Positions 1,265 to 46,495 of a stretch of 46,560 nucleotides of DNA are shown here, piece after piece. Made by a program: the position numbers and the translations under genes. The DNA comes from Octopus bimaculoides (lineage: Eukaryota): positions 12,123,886-12,170,445 of the forward strand of contig NC_068997.1 of assembly GCF_001194135.2 (NCBI RefSeq). Reading direction: 5' to 3'. Numbering within the stretch: the first letter of the stretch is position 1; each line of letters starts with the position of its first letter. Under the pieces are notes generated by a model that ran no database searches, was not told where the DNA came from, and saw only the letters and a list, made by a program, of their open reading frames with translations.

Positions 1265-1269
1265 ATAAC

Positions 1270-1530
1270 ATTATATGCATACTTGTTACTAATTCAAATA
1301 TGCTTGAGATGTATTCGATCCCGTATAAAAGCCATTCACAGTATTTTTGCCATTAAGAAAATAGGTGCAAACAAACCGAGTCAGTTCGCAGCGTTCCTTA
1401 ACCAAACTGGTGAATGCACGCATTTCAGAGTGGTTGTCTTCTCTTCAGCACCAGAAACTGGAAAAGCAGACACTGCGAAGTGAGGAGAGTAGTAGGTTTC
1501 TTTTAATACATTCCTATCTTTAAAATGCTT
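1270..1530 (-). mobile_element. HHR-bearing ~225-245 nt repeat unit (family B), copy 1; retrozyme or PLE-pLTR-like
   Basis: Reverse complement aligns by eye with 2004-2282 through shared blocks ttcgcag.gtctgc, ctggt.ctgaaga, gttt.cacctat, caaaaatac, tcgaa and caagcatatttgaa. Confidence 0.75.
1407..1454 (-). ncRNA. Type I hammerhead ribozyme motif, intact core
   Basis: Minus strand reads CUGGUG-CUGAAGA-GAAGACAACCACUCU-GAAA-UGCGUGCA-UU-CACCAG. Stem I is a perfect 6 bp, stem III is A-U plus UGC/GCA, and the cleavage triplet is AUU. Stem II is weak (AGA/UCU, 3 bp). Confidence 0.75.
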
Positions 1531-1840
1531 GGCTTAGTGGTTAGGGCATTGAGCTCACGATCATGAAGTCTTGGGTTCGATTCCTGGCAACACGCTGTTT
1601 CCTTCGCTAAGACACTTTATTTCACGTTGCTCCAGTACAATTAGCTTGCAAAAATAATTAGTACTTGTAATTCAAAGGGTCAGCCTCATCACATTCTGTG
1701 TCATGCTGAATCTCCTTGAGAACTATGTTAAGTGTACACATGTGTGTGGAGTACTCAGCCATTCACACGTTAATTACACGGAGTGAGTTCCAGTATTCAC
1801 GTCATAGTACAATCACTGGTTGCGTTAGTTACCGACTCAA
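1531..1840 (+). mobile_element. tRNA-derived SINE, family C
   Basis: A-box-like ggcttagtggttagg and B-box gggttcgattcc, then a body containing aagacactttatttcacgttgctccag. Confidence 0.85.
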
Positions 1841-1919
1841 CGCAAACAAAATGCAGGACGAAAGCATTAAGCATTGATGTATATAAATGCTAATTTGTTA
1901 CTAGTCCAAATACGTTTGA

Positions 1920-2282
1920 GGTATTTACACCTATCCGTGTACAGCGAGAAATAATCTCCACGATAAAAATACAGTAAATGGTTGACTGGTTCGAATATTG
2001 CCTAAGCGGATTCCAACTGGTAATAGGGACTTATCTCTTTCTCTTGTCAGTTCGCAGAGTCTGCTTTTTCCTTTTTCTGGTACTGAAGACAAGCTATCCA
2101 CTCCCAAACTTATGCATCGCCCTCTCCGGTTTGTGGAAAGGCTGTGAAATCACAGGGTGTGTTTACACCTATCTCTCTACAGCGAGAATTTTTTTTTCCA
2201 TGACAAAAATACCACATGTAGCTTTCTCATAGGTTCGAACATACCCCAAGCATATTTGAAATGCTCACAACTTTGCATTTAT
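1920..2282 (+). mobile_element. HHR-bearing repeat unit (family B), copy 2: ~1.4 head-to-tail units with a degenerate HHR at 2077-2124
   Basis: tttacacctatc....tacagcgagaa......tcca.ga.aaaaatac occurs at ~1924 and ~2162 (period ~238). Between them lies ctggta-CUGAAGA-...-CAAA (GAAA mutated). Confidence 0.7.
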
Positions 2283-2308
2283 ATACATCACTGATTAGAA
2301 CTTTATAC

Positions 2309-2343
<35 letters not shown>

Positions 2344-2566
2344 CACACACACATACACATATACATACATATATATATATAAATTACTAAGGTGGCTTAT
2401 TCGCAATTTACAACCAAACGGTACAAGTACACTTGTCACTATAGTGACTCAGGGTGTAGGTCAGTACCAGCATTGCTAGAAATAAGAGTCAAAACAACCC
2501 TTAGTTACGGGCAAGCACTTATGTAATGACTGATAAGGGAGAGAAGTTCCCTACAGCAAGCGAGAC

Positions 2567-2619
2567 AGAGGCAGATCATCGATGAATTCGGATTTGATTA
2601 ATCCTCATCAGTGACTCTC
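2567..2619 (-). ncRNA. Type I hammerhead ribozyme motif with one core substitution (A15.1 to U)
   Basis: Minus strand reads GAGAGUCA-CUGAUGA-GGAUU-AAUCA-AAUCC-GAA-U-UCA-UCGA-UGA-UC-UGCCUCU. Stem II is 5 bp, stem III 3 bp with a UCGA loop, stem I 6 of 7 bp, triplet AUC. Confidence 0.75.
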
Positions 2620-3074
2620 ACCCGGTTGTCGAGGGTTAAAGCTAACACATCTTTTCAGTTTATAGAGAAAACCGTAGGAATCTGAGGCTGATTCCATGCA
2701 CATATATATTGTCTACATGCATGCATATATTTGGATGAACGTTCTCAGATGCATAAACCGTTATTGGTGCTTGTAATATGTACATAACATTGTATAAAAT
2801 AAAATTGTTTCTACGCGTTTTTTTATAGAAAATAGAACTGAGATTAGCAATACGAGAATCATACTTTACCTAAAACGGCCACCATCTTACTTCACCAACC
2901 AACCGACTTGAATACATCTAACAGATTCTAGCATCATAAGTAAATTAATTATCATCCACAAAATTCATCACGTATCTTTCATTAGCTTTTAAGCAATCGT
3001 AGATTGGATATTAATTATCTAAATTCTAGCAATGATTGATAAAATATACTTCTTCGGTTATAAAATAATTGGGT

Positions 3075-3075
3075 T

Positions 3076-3119
<44 letters not shown>

Positions 3120-3170
3120 TATAGATAGATAGATAGATAGATAGACAAACAGACAGACAGTCAGATAGAT
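3075..3170. repeat. (GATA)n/(GACA)n tetranucleotide tract (others at ~12795, ~16416, ~42121, ~44277)
   Basis: Visible tandem GATA. Confidence 0.95.
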
Positions 3171-3775
3171 ATTTTGCATGCATTTTAGGACATTCTTTTA
3201 AATATGCAGAAAGGTTTCAACGTCATACAGTCAAACCATTGATATATTTTCTAAAGTTCTGAGTCGTATTACCAAATATAAATAAACAGTTGAGGTATAC
3301 TCGCGAATGAAATGAGACGGTGTCTGTCTCCGTGTGAATGGGGATTCTTTAAATAGATAATAGTGAAAACAAAATATGTCGGTAACGGTGTCAAAGAAAA
3401 TTTCTTCTTTTACTCAGCAAAGCTTTTGAATAAACGGTAGATTGATAGATAGATAGATAATGGTGTATGTGAACATATATAAATAGATACACACACGCAC
3501 ACACACAAACACACACACATTCCGATCTCGTAAACACATACATACACCCACACATATACATGCCTATCACATTGTCAGCAAATTCTATATATAACGTATA
3601 TATGTGCATGTACGTACGTATGTATGTATGTAACCATGTATGTATGTATATATATATATATATATATATAAACAATATATGAGTATATGCATATATATGT
3701 ACATGTATGTATATACGTTCATCTACATGTACATATAGATACATAACTGGGTACATGACGTGGCANNNNNNNNNN

Positions 3776-3806
<31 letters not shown>

Positions 3807-4369
3807 AATATATGAGTATATGCATATATATGTACATGTATGTATATACGTTCATCTACATGTACATATAGATACATAACTGGGTACATGACGTGGCAAA
3901 AGAACAAGGACAAAATGGTAAACAAGGTGCAACAAACAAGCATGCCACATAGAAACATATATACGTATTTATATGTATATATATATATATATATGCATGT
4001 ATGTATATATTGGTATATATTTATGTATGTTCCCTTGTATACATATATATATATTGATGGACATACGAATGCATGTATGTATATGCTCACACACACTGAC
4101 ATATGGACACACGCATTCACATGCATGCCAATTCTTGTGTGCGTGTATGTGTATGCGTGTGTGTCTGAGGGTGTGTGTGTGTGTGTATGTTGCATAATTT
4201 GCGGTAAATGTGCATTTTTTTTTTCGAATTACAAAAATTGTTAATTAGACGAACACGACGATACGATCTGGAATGTATGTTAACGGCAAAACGCCAAACA
4301 AAATCGTGATGATATGCCTGTTGATATACGTAATAGTGATTATGATGATAATATGCAATCATAATCATC

Positions 4370-7628: not shown

Positions 7629-8276
7629 CACATATATCTCTCAAGAGCTACTTAGGTAATATATGTATAATGTAGTTTTCTGCAAATCTGCTTTAATAGC
7701 AATGTATTTGCGCATAAACGTACATATATTGTAGAAAAATATCTTCTTAGATACATATACTCATGCATATGATTTCATATATTCGTATTTCTTTTGTCTT
7801 GTGTATATCTGCGTAGGTATATTTATTGTATGCTTCGATGAAATGGTTGAAATCCTATTATCTAGCTACTTACGTTCCGCTAATTCAAGTATTAATACAA
7901 CGTGTTTCCACTAGCTTTGCTTGTACATTCACTAGTTATCTGAATAATGGTGTCTTCTGTCATTTATTCAATCCAATAAAGTTTCATATAAAAGCTACTC
8001 GTCTCCGACAATAAGTTTTGGTTGTGTAATTTACTTTATGTAACTAATTATCACCTTATGCTAAGGAATCATACGTAATGATATAACTAAATATCTTTTA
8101 AATAATCTCTTATGGTTTGTTTTGTTTTACATATGAGTATGTTGTCTGCTTGTCAAAAGACAAAATTGAACAACCAGAACGAGAGGAGGAGACATGTTGA
8201 ATACAGCGCCGCTCAAGAAAAGTCACACGATGAGTGACCAATGAACTTTGACAAAGAAACTAAAACAATAATAATA

Positions 8277-8644
<368 letters not shown>

Positions 8645-8645
8645 A

Positions 8646-8818
8646 TTTCAAATATTTGCGTCAAGATCAGCTTAGGGAAGGTGGAGGAGAATCGATTACA
8701 TTGACCCTAGTGCTCAATTGGTACTTAATTTATCGACTCCGAAATGATGAAAGGCAAAGTCGACCTCGGTGGAATTTAAACTCAGAACGTAGCGACGGAC
8801 GAAATATCTCTAAGCATT
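8646..8818 (-). mobile_element. SINE family A, 5'-truncated
   Basis: Matches the other copies up to ...gaaatatctctaagcatt and then stops. Confidence 0.88.
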
Positions 8819-8819
8819 A

Positions 8820-9900
8820 CTGGGTAACATAGCTAAGTGGAATACACGTCTCCTTCTACACCATAGTAATGGAATTAGCCAATCTAACAACATCAACATC
8901 ACACGGGGCATCTTTCAAGGTAACTCCATCTCCCTATTACTCTTTTGCATGGCATTGATCACACTTTCAAACGAACTAATACCAGGTATGGGTTCAAAGT
9001 GTATAATATTATAGTAAACCATCTGTTTTATATGGACGATCTGAAACTGCTTGCTAGAAATGACGAAGAGCTAGTAGAGTTGTTAACAATTGTGAAAGAG
9101 TTCAACAATGACATAGAGATAGATTTTGGCTTTGATAAGTGTGCTAAAGCAACTTTTGTAGGAAACAAGCTCAAACAAACAGCTTCCGTTAAATTAGATA
9201 TCGACACTATCATAAAGGAGCTTGACCCACAAGAAAGTTGTAAATACCTGGACATAAACGAAGGATATTGTATACAACATGCTACTATGAAGGGAAAATA
9301 AGAAAGGAATATTACAGGCGAGTAAGATTCATACTAAAAACTGAAGTCAACTCCAAAAATCGCATCGATGTCATTAACACCCTGGCACTTCCAGTAATCC
9401 AATATAGTTTTAACATCATTAACTGCAATCTTACAGAGCTCCAACGCCTGGATAGGAAGGCAAGAAAACTACTAACATCTAAGAACATGCACCATTCAAA
9501 AGCAGACGTTGATCGTCTGTACCTACCTTGATGTAATGGGGAAAGAGGAATGATGAAGGCAGAACTGTGCTATAAGACCTCCATAAAATCAATGAACAAG
9601 TACTTATCTAGTACAGAGGACTGGATGCTGCGGCTTGTGTGCAAACACGAAGCAGCATAAACTCACATTCTATTGTCAAGGAAACTTTCAAATTCGCGAG
9701 GGAACTTGGCATTAACCCTGAAATAGTTGAAGAACCTGAAACCACTGCTACAAAACAAGCAAAACGGATCGAACAGACTTCAAAACACGTGCAGAAACAA
9801 ATTGAGGAGCGGTGGAGCCAGAAGCCTTTTCATGGACAGTGTAGATCGAGCAACAACTCATCAGAGGCCGAGAAGCTAGGGACTGAAAGTAGAGACTGTG
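8820..9900 (+). mobile_element. Decayed R4/Dong-clade non-LTR retrotransposon, C-terminal half of RT and thumb
   Basis: Frameshifted translation gives RGIFQGNSISP, NHLFYMDDLKLLA, FGFDKCAKA, KYL, RKEYYRRVR, ALPVIQYSF, HHSKADVDRLYLP*..GRG, WSQKPFHGQ and GLKVET, motifs typical of R4/Dong RT. Confidence 0.9.
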
Positions 9901-12023: not shown

Positions 12024-12240
12024 GGCGGTGAGCTGGCTGAATTGTTAGCACACCGGACAAAATGCTTAATGGTATTTCGTCTGCCGCTACGTTCTGAGTT
12101 CAAATTCCGCCGAGGTCAACTTTGCCTTTCATCCTTTCGGGGTCGATAAATTAAGTACCGGTCAAGTATAAGGGTCGATGTAATCGACTTTCCCCCTCCC
12201 CACAATTTCCAGGCCTTGTGCTTATAGTACAAAGGATTAT
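12024..12240 (+). mobile_element. SINE family A, full length
   Basis: ggcggtgagctggctgaattgttagcac; B-box gagttcaaattcc; tail ggccttgtgcttatagtacaaaggatt. Confidence 0.93.
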
Positions 12241-23835: not shown

Positions 23836-24033
23836 ATAATTATTTCTACTATAGGCACAAGGCCTGGAATTTGAGGGAGGGGACTAGTCGATTGCATCGA
23901 CTCCAGTGTTTCACTGGTACTTAATTTATCGACTCCCGAAAGGATGAAAAGCAAAGTCGACCTCGGTGGAATTTGAACTCAGAAAGTAGCGACGAGTGAA
24001 ATACCGCTAAGCATTTCGTCCACCGTGATAACG

Positions 24034-25861: not shown

Positions 25862-26040
25862 TGATTTCTCTTTCCTCCGTCTTTCTTTTCTATTGGTCTT
25901 TCCTCTGTTTCTGAAGAGGAGCGTTCGCTCGAAACGTTAAACCATCTTTCTTTCCTTCCCTGAGCGTCTGCTAATACTTTACATGTACCACGTACTTGCG
26001 TTATTGTTTTTTTGTGTGTTTGTTCTTCGTTTTGGGGGAT
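25862..26040 (+). mobile_element. HHR-bearing short repeat (family A), copy 1
   Basis: Shares an identical 42-nt block (25952-25993 = 39941-39982) and a pyrimidine-rich leader with 39853-40045; ends at (TA)n. Confidence 0.85.
25907..25942 (+). ncRNA. Minimal type I hammerhead ribozyme
   Basis: GUUU-CUGAAGA-G-GAGC-GUUC-GCUC-GAAA-CG-UU-AAAC. Stem I 4 bp, stem II 4 bp, palindromic ACGU stem III; predicted cleavage after 25938. Confidence 0.82.
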
Positions 26041-26048
26041 TTATATAC

Positions 26049-26108
<60 letters not shown>

Positions 26109-26191
26109 ATATATATATAAGAATGTCGATGCAAACCAGAAAAAACTGAACTCTAAATATGAATAAATGTGTATTTTTATAAATATTTAGC

Positions 26192-26605
26192 AGTAGTAAC
26201 CGAGTAACCGAGGTCCAAGAGTTTCGTGCGTTGACACTTATTAAAACGGTCACAAGTCTTCGACCTGTGAGTTTGTACAACTTGTGTTAGATATATTTCC
26301 CTCACGATTGTTCTAGATCAAATTCTAAAAATCATAAACATGTTACGTGGATAACGCAAATAGTTTGCCTGTTATGTCGTTCAATAAGTAAATACATAGA
26401 TAAATAGATAAATAAGTACAGAAATAAAGAGAGAAAAAAAGAAAGAAACCTTGTGCGTGTCATTACACACGCGCTCGCACCCTCACGCACCCTCACGCAC
26501 ATATACCAAAAACACGCAACAAAATTCGAACATACACATACACCAGACAGAGTGTATATATATGCGGATATATGCATACATGGACACGCTCGCACGCTTA
26601 TACAT

Positions 26606-26640
<35 letters not shown>

Positions 26641-27223
26641 CACACACACACATNNNNNNNNNNNNNNNNNNNNNNNNNNNNNNNNNNNNNNNNNNNNNNN
26701 NNNNNNNNNNNNNNNNNNNNNNNNNNNNNNNNNNNNNNNNNNNNNNNNNNNNNNNNNNNNNNNNNNNNNNNNNNNNNNNNNNNNNNNNNNNNNNNNNNNN
26801 NNNNNNNNNNNNNTATATATATATCCACATACATATGCGTTTCGGTATGTGGATGTGTGCGTGAGTACATATACGTATATATGTATATAATATATATATA
26901 TGTATGTGTAAATGTGCGTATATACTTGTAACAAGACAGAGAAAGAAAGAAAAAGGCAAAGACTTTTTATTTTATATTGTACTTTATTTCACATTTATAT
27001 TTATTTTATTCTGTATTTCTTTACTTTCGTCTACTTACCGTGTGTATGTGCACACACACACGCACACACACACACACACACACACCCACATATGTATATA
27101 TATGCGTAGGAGCATGTATATTTATGTATATATGTATGTGTAAATGTACGTGTGTATATGAACATATACGTATGTATATGTACGTATATGTGTTTATGTG
27201 TCTGTGTATGAGTATATGTATGA

Positions 27224-27279
<56 letters not shown>

Positions 27280-27591
27280 TTATATGTATGTGTGTGTGTG
27301 TGTGTGTGTGTACGTGCGTGCGTGCGTGCGTGCGGTGACACGCACAAGGTTTCTTTCTTTTTTCTCTCTTTGTCTTTATTTATTTATTTAACGACGTATT
27401 TGCTCATGAACGGGTAAACTATTTGCATTATCCACGTGACATTCCCGTGATTTTAAAATTTGATCTAGAACAATCGAGACGGGAATATATTTGTCACCAG
27501 CTGTATAAACTCTGAGGTCTTCGACCTGTGACTATTTTGGTAACTGTCAATATACGAAACTCTCGGATTTTGAGTCACTGTTACCTCTACT
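26192..27591. repeat. Long diverged inverted repeat (arms 26192-26462 and 27336-27591) around a microsatellite-rich core
   Basis: Perfect inverted blocks include cgattgttctagatcaaatt (26305-26324 vs 27457-27476) and gaaagaaaccttgtgcgtgtca (26441-26462 vs 27336-27357). Confidence 0.88.
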
Positions 27592-28062
27592 ATATATATG
27601 AATATATATATNNNNNNNNNNGTTTGTGTGTGTGAGTGAACGTAAGTATGTCTGCGTGCGTTTAGGTCGATGTTTTGGCGATGGACCTTGGCGAAGGATA
27701 CGAATATTGATTGGAAAACCGAAATGAAGTTGTTACGAACAGGAAATCTCTTGTGATATATATTCTGATATTTTGTGTCATTCCAGCCTTCATAAAACAA
27801 TGGACAAATTAATGTTCCTTTGGGAAGGTGCAACAAACGACGTTATTTGTCACAAATCTGATATAAATATAAAAACATCATAAATTCTCTCATGACCAAA
27901 TTATGAAGTCAATTTTCTGTGTTCGAATTAATTAATTAACAGTAGAATACTTGGTACGATACACTCATTTGTCTGTAGTTCAGCGATGAAAAAACTCGGT
28001 TGGCAGCATCAGTAATAACCTCATTGGTATTTTTTTAATTGTAGTGTCATTGATATTAACAA

Positions 28063-33569: not shown

Positions 33570-33820
33570 GTATCGCGCGACCAAGTGACCGACCAGGCCA
33601 TCAGATGTTGTTACACGTCGCTGGTCACAATGCCTACATTATTTTAGTCTTCAAATGAAACCACCGTGCTTGGCTAGGTGAACAGTTCGACATTTCCCCC
33701 AGATTGAAAGGGGTCTGGATCAACGTGAAATTAATTGTTTTTGCTCAAGAACACAACGCGCTGCCGAATCATGGAATCGAAACCACGATCGAGCGATAGT
33801 GAGTGTAACAACCTAACTAA
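33570..33820 (-). mobile_element. SINE with a family C-like tRNA head and a different 3' half
   Basis: Reverse complement of 33725-33820 matches 1533-1640 (ttcgattcc, tttcacgttg.tccag); 33570-33690 is unrelated to 1640-1840. Confidence 0.7.
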
Positions 33821-38794: not shown

Positions 38795-39195
38795 GGCAAC
38801 GAGCTAGCAGAAACGTTGTCTGACTTTACGTTCTGAGTTCAAATTCCGCCGAGGTCGACTTTGCCTTTCATCCTTTCGGGGGTCGATGAATTGAGTACCA
38901 GTTGCGCACTGTGATCGATCTAATCGATTGGCCCCCTTCGCAAAAATTTCGGGCCTTGTGCCTAGATCAGAAAAGCTTATTCAAGGCAGCGAGCTGGCAG
39001 AAACGTTAGCACGCCGGGCGAAATTCTTAACGATATTTCAATGGTCGCTACGTTCTGAGTTCAAATTCCGCCGAGGTCAACTATGCCTTTCATCCTTTCG
39101 GAGTTGATAAATTGAGCACCAGTTGCGTACTGGGATCGATTTAATCGACTGGCCCCTCTCCCCAAATTTCGGACCTTGTGCCTAGAGTAGAAAAG
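38795..39195 (+). mobile_element. Head-to-tail SINE-A dimer (38795-38981 and 38985-39195) inside one 19-bp TSD
   Basis: attaattacatcgaggaaa at 38776-38794 and 39196-39214. Confidence 0.93.
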
Positions 39196-39852
39196 ATTAA
39201 TTACATCGAGGAAATCTTATGTAATCACCGTCACGCATATTTATACACACATACATAGTTTCAGTGACTGTTTCAGCTCTGAAAAATTCTTATATAACAG
39301 ATTTGAAGCAAACTGGTGATAGACTGCGTTGGCATGACGTATCGTTTTTTTTTGTTTTTTGTTTTTTAGGTGACATAAAGAATACAGAGAAATTGCCGTA
39401 GAGAGTGGAATATCAATAAATTTCAATAGAGGTTTTCTGCGAGTAAAAGTTGACAGGAAGGAAATATTTAGAAAAACAGCAGAGTTTTACATCCTCTGTT
39501 TTTATATTTTCCTGCAAGTAACTTTAACTTTAAAAAAGGACTCTGTCCAAACCGTAGGATATTCCATTCTCTGCGGTAATTTTACTCTACTCTATTCGAA
39601 AATTTCTTATACTGAGTTTGTTTTTTTTTAACATTAAATACGTAAACAGCAAAAGAAGTATAACGTCTGCTATCTCCTAGCAGGTATTAAGAATTTAGAC
39701 AAGTTATCATGTCGTCATGTTATTACATGCATTAAAATGCATTGACGCGTAGAAAAGGAAATAAAATATTCGCGTCTCTTTATCCACCAGGCAAATACAT
39801 TGGGATAAAACAAACAGATACAATCACACACACACACATATCATTGGCGGTT

Positions 39853-40045
39853 TTTCTCTCCGTCTTCCTTTTCTCTTGGACTTTCCTCTGTCTCCTGTTT
39901 CTGACGAAGAGCTTTACTCGAAACGTAAAACTACCTTCCTTTCCTTCCCTGAGCGTCTGCTAATACTTTACATGTACCACGTCCTCACCTTTTTGTTGTT
40001 TTTTCTTGTGTTTTTTCTTCGTTTATTTTTTGGGATTCATTACAT
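39853..40045 (+). mobile_element. HHR-bearing short repeat (family A), copy 2
   Basis: Homologous to 25862-26040; ends at a TA-rich run. Confidence 0.85.
39897..39931 (+). ncRNA. Minimal type I hammerhead ribozyme
   Basis: GUUU-CUGACGA-A-GAG-CUUUA-CUC-GAAA-CG-UA-AAAC; GUA triplet, predicted cleavage after 39927. Confidence 0.8.
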
Positions 40046-40242
40046 ATATATAATTTTTCATAGAAAACAATGTAATCGTTACCAATATAGCAAGAGATTT
40101 CACCACAAAAAAGTCTAAATTAGACTCCTTAGTGATCGTTCTCCTTGTTTATATATATCCAAAGTTTTAAATTTAAATTTAAGAGAGAGATTTGACGCTA
40201 ATATCCATTATTATTGTAATTTATTTCTATATATATATATAT

Positions 40243-45249: not shown

Positions 45250-45480
45250 CTTATTTCGTTACTGCCCACAGGGGGCTACACACAGAGGGGACAAACAAGG
45301 ACAGACAAAGGGATTAAGTCGGTTACATCCCACTCCAGTGCGTAACTGGTACTTTATTTATCGGCCCCGAAAGGATGAAAAGCAAAGTCGACCTCGGCGG
45401 AATTTGAACTCAGAACGTAACGGCAGACGAAATACTGCTAAGCATTTCGCCCGGCACGCTAACGTTTCTGCCAGCTCCCC
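45250..45480 (-). mobile_element. SINE family A with the alternative tail
   Basis: Same tail as 12839-13060. Confidence 0.92.
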
Positions 45481-46318: not shown

Positions 46319-46495
46319 CATCGAAAAATACCTTAAGAATGAGAACCCACGCTCGAAATTTCCCCAAGACACCTGAAGAAGGCTGGAGGGTATACCAGCC
46401 GAAACGTTGTATTAACAACAAGCAAGATGAGGACAAATATGCGTCAAATGTATATAATTCCTCATCTCTTAAATATAGAACTGTATTATATAAAT
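46318..46495 (+). mobile_element. HHR-bearing terminal repeat (family D), Penelope pLTR-like, between (AAT)n and (TA)/(CA)n
   Basis: Short unique segment between two microsatellites that carries an HHR motif. The PLE assignment is inferred from the known HHR-PLE association. Confidence 0.6.
46368..46413 (+). ncRNA. Minimal type I hammerhead ribozyme
   Basis: GACAC-CUGAAGA-A-GGCUGG-AGGGUAUA-CCAGCC-GAAA-CG-UU-GUAUU. Stem II is a perfect 6 bp; stem I has one mismatch; predicted cleavage after 46408. Confidence 0.82.

What the first reader, a model, noticed from the sequence alone, without database searches (positions are those of the whole stretch)
1270..2282. Retrozyme-like ~225-245 nt hammerhead unit, present as a partial tandem and as an inverted copy
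Seen: 1270-1530 (minus) and 2004-2282 (plus) are homologous along their length and each contains an HHR motif. The plus copy is preceded by a partial extra unit (1920-2010, period ~238), and the minus copy appears to start and end on similar aagcat(a)ttt sequence. Established: metazoan non-LTR retrozymes (newt satellite 2, Schistosoma SM-alpha, cricket pDo500, mollusc and cnidarian examples) are ~170-400 nt tandem monomers with one type I HHR that yield circular RNAs. Inference: this is a decayed member of an octopus retrozyme family, or a Penelope-type pLTR family. I do not know of one described from octopus.
Basis: partly seen in the sequence, partly recalled or inferred. Interest (0 to 1): 0.85.

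Follow-up and report, generated by a model that had tools for sequence, protein, structure and literature searches.

The report
Decayed hammerhead-bearing Penelope-type repeat complex
This is an old, mutated cluster of copies of a roughly 240-base mobile repeat that once carried a self-cutting hammerhead RNA motif, arranged as Penelope-like retroelements usually insert; it is an ordinary dead relic of a known kind of element.

Summary
The repeat structure is real. rc(1266-1514) and 2020-2304 are homologous (70-75% identity). 1921-2019 is a partial upstream copy with a period of 238-244. An assembly gap cuts off the minus copy.

Only the minus copy has a full hammerhead core: helix I of 6 bp, CUGAAGA, GAAA, a palindromic helix III and a UU cleavage site. 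A compact descriptor found no such motif in 1500 simulated windows. Its helix II is defective (G.U, A×C, A-U, G-C). The plus copy is dead (GAAA changed to CAAA, helix I lost). Rfam reports no hammerhead here, but it also misses three clear Penelope-type minimal hammerheads elsewhere in the window.

The layout matches the published Penelope-like-element insertion pattern: a partial tandem, an adjacent inverted 5'-truncated copy, a tail at the outer ends only, and a microsatellite flank. No RT/GIY-YIG ORF adjoins the locus.

The best reading is a decayed Penelope-mobilised short unit, either a pLTR or a retrozyme-like element. The two cannot be told apart without the genome. There is no HHR-to-HHR tandem, and no outside copies could be retrieved. 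I rate it a new member of a known kind, of low to moderate interest. The organism was not verified.

The parts
1266..1517 (-). Full unit, minus orientation. It comprises a 3' tail (1266-1292, cut by the assembly gap at 1265), the C segment (1293-1360) and the 5' region plus A-B segment (1361-1517).
   Evidence: BLASTN and global alignments to 2020-2304 give 69-75% identity.
1402..1461 (-). Hammerhead-like type I motif. Outer helix I is CCA/UGG (1459-1461 with 1402-1404). Helix I is CUGGUG (1449-1454) paired with CACCAG (1407-1412). The core box CUGAAGA is at 1442-1448. The helix II region GAAGACAACCACUCU is at 1427-1441. GAAA is at 1423-1426. Helix III AUGCGUGCAU is at 1414-1423. H17 is the U at 1413, so predicted cleavage lies between 1413 and 1412.
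   Evidence: It is the only site in the window with helix I >=4 bp and helix III >=3 bp. A compact descriptor found none in 1500 simulated windows. Helix II is imperfect. No Rfam hammerhead model hits it.
1518..1530 (-). Short remnant of the unit's C-end (AAGCATTTTAAAG) directly upstream of the unit's 5' region. This is the same C-end to 5'-region adjacency seen in the plus arm. It overlaps the SINE junction.
   Evidence: plus direct comparison with AAGCATATTTGAA at 1293-1305 and 2248-2260.
1529..1847 (+). tRNA-derived SINE inserted into the complex. It is not part of the unit. The A box TGGCTTAGTGG is at 1530-1540 and the B box GGTTCGATTCC is at 1574-1584, 44 nt start to start. A possible target-site duplication, AAAATGC, lies at 1522-1528 and 1848-1854.
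   Evidence: The region gives a tRNA-like match in Rfam. A partial relative lies at 33715-33788. The exact ends are inferred.
1861..1925 (-). Inverted, 5'-truncated fragment consisting of the unit's C-end plus tail. It abuts the plus arm head-to-head, with an overlap of at most 5 nt at 1921-1925.
   Evidence: The inverted repeat I1 pairs 1861-1924 with 2241-2304 (64 nt, 77%). BLAST E is 1.8e-8. It is 75% identical to the plus tail and 82% to the minus-copy tail.
1921..2019 (+). Partial (5'-truncated) upstream unit, C'. It corresponds to 2159-2263 and lacks both the ribozyme region and most of the tail.
   Evidence: Direct repeats D3, D9 and D4 have spacings of 238, 240 and 244. Identity is 72% over 99 nt.
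2020..2263 (+). Full unit, plus orientation (244 nt, GC about 0.39).
2077..2117 (+). Dead hammerhead relic. CUGGUA (2077-2082) and CUGAAGA (2083-2089) are retained. The GAAA box reads CAAA (2105-2108). The 3' strand of helix I and helix III are lost.
   Evidence: Alignment with the minus copy and coordinates.
2264..2304 (+). 41-nt terminal tail, CTCACAACTTTGCATTTATATACATCACTGATTAGAACTTT. It is present at the 3' end of all three 3'-bearing copies and absent from the internal tandem junction at 2019/2020.
2305..2380 (.). (CA)n(TA)n microsatellite directly flanking the right end of the complex.

Best explanation
The locus is one old, now inert insertion complex of a short (~240 nt plus a 41-nt tail), low-GC retroelement unit. 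The unit carried a type I hammerhead ribozyme on its sense strand and was copied by Penelope-like-element (PLE) machinery. It is either a PLE pseudo-LTR/3'-end unit or a non-autonomous retrozyme-like derivative.

Inferred mechanism when the element was alive:
1. A more-than-unit (tandem or circular) RNA was transcribed.
2. The hammerhead, alone or as a dimer through its self-complementary helix III, cut after the UU preceding CACCAG.
3. A PLE RT/GIY-YIG enzyme supplied in trans reverse-transcribed the RNA at a nicked, microsatellite-rich target.
4. 5' truncation and template switching produced the observed pattern: a 5'-truncated upstream copy, a full copy, a terminal tail and an adjacent inverted 5'-truncated copy.

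Shown directly: the copies, their order and orientation, the tail, the motif and its defects, the later SINE insertion, and the roughly 25-30% divergence between copies.

Inferred: that the motif ever cleaved, the involvement of a PLE enzyme, and that the complex formed in one or a few events.
For: Copies and architecture:
- All partial copies keep the 3' end relative to the hammerhead strand. This is 5' truncation, as expected for reverse transcription.
- In both arms the unit's 5' region (ATAGGRA...) is preceded within 0-6 nt by the unit's C-end (AAGCNNNTT...AA). The template was therefore longer than one unit.
- The tail is at the outer ends only. It is 41 nt, and the published figure is 30-40 bp (PMC8557442).
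- That paper also describes the partial tandem, the inverted 5'-truncated copy adjoining the upstream repeat, and microsatellite targets such as (CA)n and (TA)n.
- Cervera & de la Pena 2014 report paired hammerheads about 100-700 bp apart on opposite strands as typical of truncated PLEs (PMC4209133). Here the two ribozyme regions lie about 630 bp apart on opposite strands.

The motif:
- It has helix I of 6 nt, a helix II region of 4 positions and a palindromic helix III. This is the 'canonical metazoan type I' layout described.
- It was unique in the window, and none appeared in 1500 simulations with a compact descriptor.
- The G at 10.1 survives in the minus copy and the C at 11.1 survives in the plus copy. 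An ancestral G10.1-C11.1 pair is therefore possible.

Context:
- The same window holds three unmistakable PLE-type minimal hammerheads, against 0.015 expected. HHR-bearing PLE relics are therefore common in this genome.
- GC of 0.38-0.40 and a 238-244 nt period fit the published retrozyme range.
- Pairwise K2P distances of 0.2-0.5 are similar for all pairs of copies. This fits formation at about the same time.
Against: - Helix II is poor, and the A×C mismatch at 10.2/11.2 is shared by both copies. It may be ancestral.
- The minimum-free-energy fold uses AGAG/CUCU, which sequesters G8 and A9 of the core.
- No Rfam hammerhead model matches at E<=10. This is weak evidence, because Rfam also misses the window's PLE minimal hammerheads.
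- Only two copies cover the ribozyme region, and one lacks its 3' half. No covariation test is possible.
- This motif has a helix III and no bulged nucleotide before 10.1. That differs from typical PLE minimal hammerheads, including the three elsewhere in the window.
- No RT or GIY-YIG ORF adjoins the locus.
- There are no other copies in the window, and none could be retrieved from any accessible collection.
- The window is microsatellite-rich throughout, so the (CA)n flank carries little weight.
- The compact descriptor was chosen after the motif had been seen.
Confidence: 0.62

Rival explanations
1. Non-LTR retrozyme in the strict sense. On this reading the locus is a remnant of a tandem array of ~240-nt monomers, each with its own type I hammerhead. 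The array would have been expressed as circular RNA, and the locus has since been reduced and rearranged. This is the narrower version of the best explanation and the first reader's preferred one.
For: The unit period of 238-244 nt and GC of 0.38-0.40 lie within the published ranges of 150-450 bp and below 45-50%. The hammerhead has the canonical 6/4 layout with a helix III, unlike PLE minimal motifs. The C-end to 5'-region adjacency in both arms implies a tandem or circular template. No protein-coding part is attached.
Against: No two ribozymes lie in tandem, because each arm has only 1.05-1.4 units. The tail and the inverted 5'-truncated fragment are PLE insertion features, not array features. 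Linear and circular folds are not more stable than shuffles, with z from -0.4 to -1.35. Published retrozyme circRNAs are described as highly self-paired. Copy number and expression are untested. A 2026 preprint argues that retrozymes are PLE pLTR derivatives anyway, so the distinction may be one of degree.
Confidence: 0.3
2. An unrelated repeat, such as a MITE or foldback DNA transposon with ~64-bp terminal inverted repeats at 1861-2304, or a local satellite with an inversion. On this reading the hammerhead-like motif in one copy is a coincidence.
For: 1861-1924 and 2241-2304 form 64-nt inverted termini at 77%. Helix II is defective in both copies, and the full motif exists in only one copy. 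With a loose descriptor the chance expectation is 0.05 per window. Rfam is silent. The folds are unremarkable.
Against: The compact descriptor found none in 1500 simulated windows. A TIR element does not explain the direct partial copy C' at 1921-2019. It also does not explain why the inverted termini are simply the unit's own 3' end plus tail, or why every partial copy is 5'-truncated relative to the hammerhead strand. No target-site duplication can be defined, because the flanks are a SINE-disrupted copy and a microsatellite. No transposase is nearby.
Confidence: 0.2
3. Two independent, 5'-truncated 3' ends of an autonomous Penelope-like element, that is, ordinary pLTR fragments that landed head-to-head. 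On this reading they are not a short non-autonomous unit.
For: Most PLE hammerheads are reported as single dispersed motifs from truncated PLEs, sometimes paired on opposite strands. PLEs show heavy 5' truncation. PLEs are abundant in octopus genomes and expanded at about JC 0.2, which is comparable with the divergence seen here.
Against: Both arms show the same junction, with the C-end immediately before the unit's 5' region. This indicates a fixed ~240-nt period rather than arbitrary truncation points within a 3-4 kb element. The evidence in the minus arm is only about 13 nt and overlaps a SINE junction. No RT/EN remnant is detectable next to either arm.
Confidence: 0.3

Closest known systems
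Penelope-like element insertion units: pLTR plus inverted 5'-truncated copy plus tail (Evgen'ev & Arkhipova; Craig et al. 2021, PMC8557442)
   Same: A partial tandem forms a pseudo-LTR. An inverted 5'-truncated copy abuts the upstream repeat. A terminal extension of about 30-40 bp is present at the ends only. A microsatellite lies at the boundary. A hammerhead sits on the sense strand in the repeated 3' part. The complex coincides with an assembly gap, as that paper warns for such structures.
   Different: There is no RT/GIY-YIG ORF between or beside the repeats. The full unit is only about 285 nt including the tail. The hammerhead has a helix III and lacks the extra nucleotide before 10.1 and the long helix II typical of metazoan PLE minimal hammerheads.
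Metazoan non-LTR retrozymes: coral, mussel, axolotl, newt satellite 2 and Schistosoma Sm-alpha-type repeats (Cervera & de la Pena 2020, PMC7229834)
   Same: The monomer size (238-244 nt), low GC, lack of coding capacity, type I hammerhead with a 6-bp helix I and 4-position helix II, a short palindromic helix III compatible with dimeric action, and a more-than-unit template.
   Different: There is no array with one ribozyme per monomer. Only one near-intact ribozyme is present, and it has a mismatched helix II. The predicted circular fold is not unusually stable. There is no evidence of expression or circles. The tail and the inverted fragment are not described retrozyme features.
PLE minimal hammerheads (Cervera & de la Pena 2014, PMC4209133; Lunse et al. 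2017)
   Same: The core boxes, the palindromic 15.x/16.x region, occurrence as dispersed or oppositely oriented pairs, and probable dependence on dimerisation. Three textbook examples lie in the same window (25911, 39901, 46373).
   Different: The motif at 1402-1461 has a real helix III (3-4 bp), no bulge between A9 and 10.1, and G.U rather than G-C at 10.1/11.1. Its host repeat shows no sequence similarity to the min-HHR repeats in the window.

Membership tests
Hammerhead ribozyme, type I | Conserved core: CUGANGA, GAAA and a UH cleavage site in the right order | tested here: met
   Met in the minus copy at 1413-1448. Not met in the plus copy, where GAAA reads CAAA at 2105-2108.
Hammerhead ribozyme, type I | Helix I closing the motif (about 6 bp in canonical metazoan motifs) | tested here: met
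   CUGGUG (1449-1454) pairs with CACCAG (1407-1412). This can be extended by CCA/UGG across an internal loop. Helix I is lost in the plus copy.
Hammerhead ribozyme, type I | Helix II of about 4 bp closed by the conserved G10.1-C11.1 pair | tested here: not met
   The four positions are G.U, A×C, A-U and G-C in the minus copy, and C×C, A×C, A-U and G-C in the plus copy. G10.1 and C11.1 each survive in one copy, so an ancestral pair is possible but unproven.
Hammerhead ribozyme, type I | Short helix III with a palindromic sequence | tested here: met
   AUGCGUGCAU forms 3-4 bp within one strand. Two strands could pair over all 10 positions with two G.U pairs (read directly from the sequence).
Hammerhead ribozyme, type I | Match to a curated covariance model (Rfam hammerhead families) | tested here: not met
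   No hammerhead hit at gathering score or at E<=10 on 1.4 kb or on 91 nt. As a calibration, Rfam also misses the three PLE minimal hammerheads in this window.
Hammerhead ribozyme, type I | Self-cleavage activity | not testable with these tools
   This needs in vitro transcription of monomer and dimer constructs.
Metazoan non-LTR retrozyme | Tandem repeats (dimer or larger) of 150-450 bp, each monomer with its own type I hammerhead | tested here: not met
   The period of 238-244 nt is in range. Only 1.4 units (plus arm) and about 1.05 units (minus arm) are present, and the partial copies lack the ribozyme region. The gap 909-1264 could hide more units.
Metazoan non-LTR retrozyme | Low GC content (below 45-50%) and no coding capacity | tested here: met
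   GC is 0.38-0.40. The unit has only short ORFs, and one of them tested found no homologues.
Metazoan non-LTR retrozyme | Stable, highly self-paired monomer RNA | tested here: not met
   Linear folds give z of -1.25 and -1.35. Circular monomer folds give z of -0.42 and -0.62. These are decayed copies, so the test is weak.
Metazoan non-LTR retrozyme | Many genomic copies, and expression as linear and circular RNA | not testable with these tools
   There are no other copies in the 46.5-kb window. No host genome or RNA-seq is accessible. Exact-pattern scans of other collections gave nothing relevant.
Penelope-like element (insertion unit) | Single ORF with RT and GIY-YIG endonuclease between the repeats | tested here: not met
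   Six-frame translation of 2380-3765 is full of stop codons and has no RT-like stretch. The left side is a gap and microsatellites. The only RT in the window (about 8.7-9.3 kb) is an RVT_1 fragment with LINE-type motifs.
Penelope-like element (insertion unit) | Partial tandem forming a pseudo-LTR | tested here: met
   1921-2019 lies directly upstream of the full unit 2020-2263 and is homologous to 2159-2263.
Penelope-like element (insertion unit) | Inverted 5'-truncated copy adjacent to the upstream repeat | tested here: met
   1861-1925 (minus strand; unit 3' end plus tail) abuts 1921 head-to-head.
Penelope-like element (insertion unit) | 30-40 bp tail at an end of the insertion | tested here: met
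   The 41-nt tail at 2264-2304 recurs in 1861-1901 and 1266-1292. It is absent from the internal junction at 2019/2020.
Penelope-like element (insertion unit) | Hammerhead of the PLE minimal type in the repeat (bulge before 10.1, long helix II, no helix III) | tested here: not met
   A hammerhead-like motif is present but has the canonical layout with a helix III. True minimal types occur elsewhere in the window.
MITE / TIR DNA transposon | Terminal inverted repeats flanked by a fixed-length target-site duplication | tested here: inconclusive
   Inverted termini of 64 nt at 77% are present. No duplication can be read, because the left flank is another copy split by a SINE and the right flank is (CA)n.

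The most novel reading that the evidence does not exclude
It would carry a canonical, helix-III-bearing type I ribozyme and coexist with PLE minimal-hammerhead families. Its insertions would still show the full PLE signature of tail, inverted copy and partial tandem. That would be locus-level evidence that PLE machinery mobilises retrozymes.
Probability: 0.25. Interest if true: 0.45.

Novelty: new member of a known kind. Interest (0 to 1): 0.3.

Why it matters
If a genome-wide search confirmed the family, it would add a lineage (reportedly a cephalopod) to the animals known to carry hammerhead-bearing short retroelements. It would also give a clear example in which a retrozyme-sized unit shows the structural marks of Penelope-type integration. 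[quoted passage not shown] As it stands, the locus is a single, roughly 25-30% diverged, inactive relic. It has no evident effect on the host and teaches little beyond annotation: this stretch should be masked as a PLE/retrozyme-type repeat interrupted by a SINE.

Tried and rejected
- **Rfam.** I ran the gathering scan on the whole window, then an E<=10 scan on 1265-2700 and on 1385-1475. There was no hammerhead hit. The best hits were low-complexity or tRNA-like noise. I then showed that Rfam is equally blind to three clear PLE minimal hammerheads, so I do not treat its silence as decisive.
- **Thermodynamic folding.** Folding of the motif and of whole units, linear and circular, is not better than shuffles. 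The minimum-free-energy fold of the 60-nt motif keeps helices I and III but shifts helix II to AGAG/CUCU.
- **More copies inside the window.** BLASTN with word size 7 found none.
- **More copies outside the window.**
  - Exact-pattern scans of the metagenome, viral and prokaryote genome collections found nothing relevant.
  - The one hit, L001, is a 36-nt chance match in a 57% GC contig.
  - A protein-database search with the 72-aa ORF that overlaps the minus copy found no candidates.
  - Exact-protein look-ups of the 84-aa ORF in the plus copy and of the RT ORF were not on record.
- **PLE ORF next to the locus.** None was found. The RT fragment at about 8.7-9.3 kb is RVT_1 with LINE-type motifs, and its relatives are unnamed and only about 55% identical. 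This did not identify the organism.
- **tRNA-like pol III promoter inside the unit (Sm-alpha style).** A GGTTCGAA block is conserved in all three C segments. It does not complete the B-box consensus, and there is no A box at tRNA spacing. I rejected this from direct reading of the sequence.
- **Simple palindromic segmental duplication.** Rejected. Read outward from the centre, the two arms start with different parts of the unit: C-end plus tail on one side and C' on the other.
- **PLE-style bulged helix II.** Re-parsing helix II with a bulged nucleotide gives worse pairing.
Full report
**What is in the sequence**

The window is a draft, gap-rich assembly with GC 0.35 and dense microsatellites (11 runs of N; 133 tandem-repeat rows). 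The finding lies directly after a 356-N gap (909-1264), which cuts the leftmost copy.

- BLASTN aligns 1361-1489 with 2041-2172 in inverted orientation (72%, E 1.7e-12). It also aligns 1272-1321 with 2232-2281 (76%).
- Global alignments give 75% identity for the 5' and central part and 69% for the 3' part.
- The partial extra unit is also real. 1921-2019 matches 2159-2263 at 72%, with block spacings of 238, 240 and 244 nt.
- No other copy exists in the remaining ~44 kb.

**Full anatomy**

I call the unit's parts: 5' region, A-B (which holds the ribozyme), C, C-end, and tail. From left to right the locus reads as follows.

| Coordinates | Strand | Content |
|---|---|---|
| 909-1264 | . | Assembly gap |
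| 1266-1517 | - | Full unit; its tail (1266-1292) runs into the gap |
| 1518-1530 | - | 13-nt C-end remnant |
| 1529-1847 | + | tRNA-derived SINE |
| 1861-1925 | - | 64-nt fragment: C-end plus tail |
| 1921-2019 | + | Partial unit C' |
| 2020-2263 | + | Full unit |
| 2264-2304 | + | 41-nt tail |
| 2305-2380 | . | (CA)n(TA)n microsatellite |

- The SINE has an A box TGGCTTAGTGG at 1530-1540 and a B box GGTTCGATTCC at 1574-1584. The boxes are 44 nt apart, as in a tRNA. A possible target-site duplication, AAAATGC, lies at 1522-1528 and 1848-1854.
- The 64-nt fragment is 77% complementary to 2241-2304 and is in direct orientation with 1272-1320.
- The SINE is a later insertion into the complex.

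Three regularities stand out.
- Every partial copy keeps the 3' end of the unit in the orientation in which the hammerhead is sense. All of them are therefore 5'-truncated.
- In both arms the unit's 5' region (ATAGGRA...) is preceded within 0-6 nt by the unit's own C-end. This is AAGCGGATTCCAA in the plus arm and AAGCATTTTAAAG in the minus arm. The copied template was therefore longer than one unit, either tandem or circular. The minus-arm evidence is short and overlaps the SINE junction.
- The tail follows the C-end at the three outer 3' ends but not at the internal tandem junction at 2019/2020.

All pairwise distances among the pieces are similar (K2P 0.2-0.5). The pieces could date from one event or from one period.

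**The hammerhead claim**

My descriptor required CUGANGA, GAAA, an A15.1-U16.1-closed helix III of at least 3 bp, UH, and a helix I of at least 4 bp. It found exactly one site in the window, on the minus strand:

CCA GUUU CUGGUG | CUGAAGA | GAAG ACAACCA CUCU | GAAA | UGCGUGCA U | U^ | CACCAG UU UGG

This occupies 1461 down to 1402, with predicted cleavage after the U at 1413.

- Helix I has 6 bp, followed by an internal loop and 3 more pairs.
- Helix III (AUGCGUGCAU) pairs over 3-4 bp within one strand. Between two strands it is fully self-complementary, with two G.U pairs. This is the property linked to dimeric action in metazoan type I hammerheads (PMC4209133).
- Chance expectation is 0.05 sites per window when helices II and III may span up to 60 nt.
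- With natural, compact sizes it was 0 in 1500 simulated windows. I chose the compact limits after seeing the motif, so the true significance lies between these two figures.

The weaknesses are real.
- Helix II reads G.U, A×C, A-U, G-C.
- The A×C mismatch is shared by the plus copy, so it may be ancestral.
- G10.1 survives only in the minus copy and C11.1 only in the plus copy. An ancestral G-C closing pair is therefore possible but unproven.
- The unconstrained fold keeps helices I and III but shifts helix II to AGAG/CUCU, which would tie up G8 and A9.
- The plus copy keeps CUGGUA-CUGAAGA. It has CAAA in place of GAAA and has lost helix III and the 3' strand of helix I. It is dead.
- Rfam reports no hammerhead at gathering score or at E<=10, even on 91 nt.

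**Calibration of the Rfam result and context in the window**

A plain core search (CTGANGA-N8-38-GAAA) gave 7 sites against 2.5 expected. Three of them, all on the plus strand, are textbook PLE minimal hammerheads:
- 25911: CUGAAGA-G-GAGC-GUUC-GCUC-GAAA-CG-UU|AAAC
- 39901: CUGACGA-A-GAG-CUUUA-CUC-GAAA-CG-UA|AAAC
- 46373: CUGAAGA-A-GGCUGG-AGGGUAUA-CCAGCC-GAAA-CG-UU

Each has the extra nucleotide before 10.1, a G10.1-C11.1 pair and the palindromic CG. The expectation is 0.015 per window, and no simulation out of 1000 had three. The first two lie in one ~200-bp repeat family (25871-26057 and 39853-40052, 81% identical).

Rfam misses these as well. Its silence at 1402-1461 is therefore weak evidence. 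This genome clearly carries many hammerhead-bearing PLE relics. None of them is similar in sequence to the unit studied here.

**What it most likely is**

The layout matches the published description of Penelope-like-element insertions point by point (PMC8557442):
- heavy 5' truncation
- partial tandems forming a pseudo-LTR
- a 30-40-bp tail at an end of the insertion unit
- a bias for microsatellites such as (CA)n and (TA)n
- resulting assembly problems

Cervera and de la Pena also report hammerhead pairs about 100-700 bp apart on opposite strands as typical of truncated PLEs. Here the two ribozyme regions are about 630 bp apart, or about 310 bp without the SINE.

No RT/GIY-YIG ORF adjoins the locus. 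The only RT in the window, at about 8.7-9.3 kb, is an RVT_1 fragment with LINE-type motifs (GIFQGNSISLLLF, FYMDD).

My conclusion is that a short hammerhead-bearing unit was copied by PLE-type machinery supplied in trans, from a more-than-unit template, and has been decaying ever since. With only this window I cannot decide whether to call the unit a solo or truncated pLTR or a non-LTR retrozyme. A 2026 preprint argues that the second derives from the first.

Points in favour of the strict retrozyme label:
- the 238-244 nt period
- GC of 0.38-0.40
- no coding capacity
- the canonical 6/4 hammerhead layout with a helix III

Points against it:
- no tandem pair of ribozymes
- folds no more stable than shuffles
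- the PLE-specific tail and inverted copy

**Rivals**

A MITE or foldback element bounded by the 64-nt inverted termini (1861-2304), with a coincidental hammerhead-like motif, cannot be excluded, because no target-site duplication can be read. It does not explain three things:
- the direct partial copy C'
- the fact that the 'termini' are just the unit's 3' end plus tail
- the consistent 5' truncation relative to the ribozyme strand

A simple palindromic duplication is excluded, because the two arms begin with different parts of the unit.

**Limits**

- No copy from outside the window could be obtained. Pattern scans, a protein-database search with a unit ORF and exact-protein look-ups all failed or gave a chance match.
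- The organism was not verified.
- The searchable literature shows PLEs among the most abundant ancient repeats of octopus genomes, with an expansion at about JC 0.2. This is compatible with the divergence seen here.
- I found no paper describing octopus hammerheads or retrozymes.

**Verdict**

The repeats are fully confirmed, and the hammerhead is confirmed in one copy only and is imperfect there. This is a new member of a known kind, inactive, and of low to moderate interest.

Noticed in passing
window 25911-25946, 39901-39935 and 46373-46412 (+ strand): Three textbook Penelope-type minimal hammerhead motifs. Each has a bulged nucleotide before 10.1, a G10.1-C11.1-closed helix II of 3-6 bp, GAAACGU, and no helix III. 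Three were observed against 0.015 expected per window. Rfam does not detect them. The first two sit in one ~200-bp repeat family (25871-26057 and 39853-40052, 81% identical).
   Followed up: partly
window 1529-1847 (+ strand): A tRNA-derived SINE is inserted into the repeat complex. The A box is at 1530-1540 and the B box at 1574-1584, with tRNA spacing. A possible 7-bp target-site duplication, AAAATGC, flanks it. Its only relative in the window is a 74-nt match at 33715-33788.
   Followed up: partly
window about 8690-9301 (+ strand), with further degenerate ORF pieces up to about 10000: A degenerate LINE-type reverse transcriptase fragment (Pfam RVT_1; motifs GIFQGNSISLLLF and FYMDD) broken by frameshifts and stop codons. 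Its closest database relatives are only about 55% identical and carry no name.
   Followed up: partly
window 39000-39199 and at least 15 other places (e.g. 8275-8470, 8692-8818, 12044-12239, 23837-24033, 45317-45468): An abundant SINE-like repeat family of about 150-200 bp on both strands at 70-87% identity. Copies often lie next to trinucleotide microsatellites.
   Followed up: no
window 3643-3898: A 133-bp unit is repeated twice at 99% identity across a 10-N gap (3766-3775). This looks like an unresolved scaffold overlap rather than a biological tandem repeat.
   Followed up: no
window 26183-26643 and 27170-27597: An inverted pair of ~460-bp, microsatellite-rich segments at 71% identity. They flank the gap at 26654-26813.
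   Followed up: no
L001 2121-2156 (metagenome contig Ga0058704_10006584): This was the only hit of the exact-pattern scans. It is a 36-nt match in a 57% GC contig with no further similarity to the window, so I treat it as chance.
   Followed up: yes
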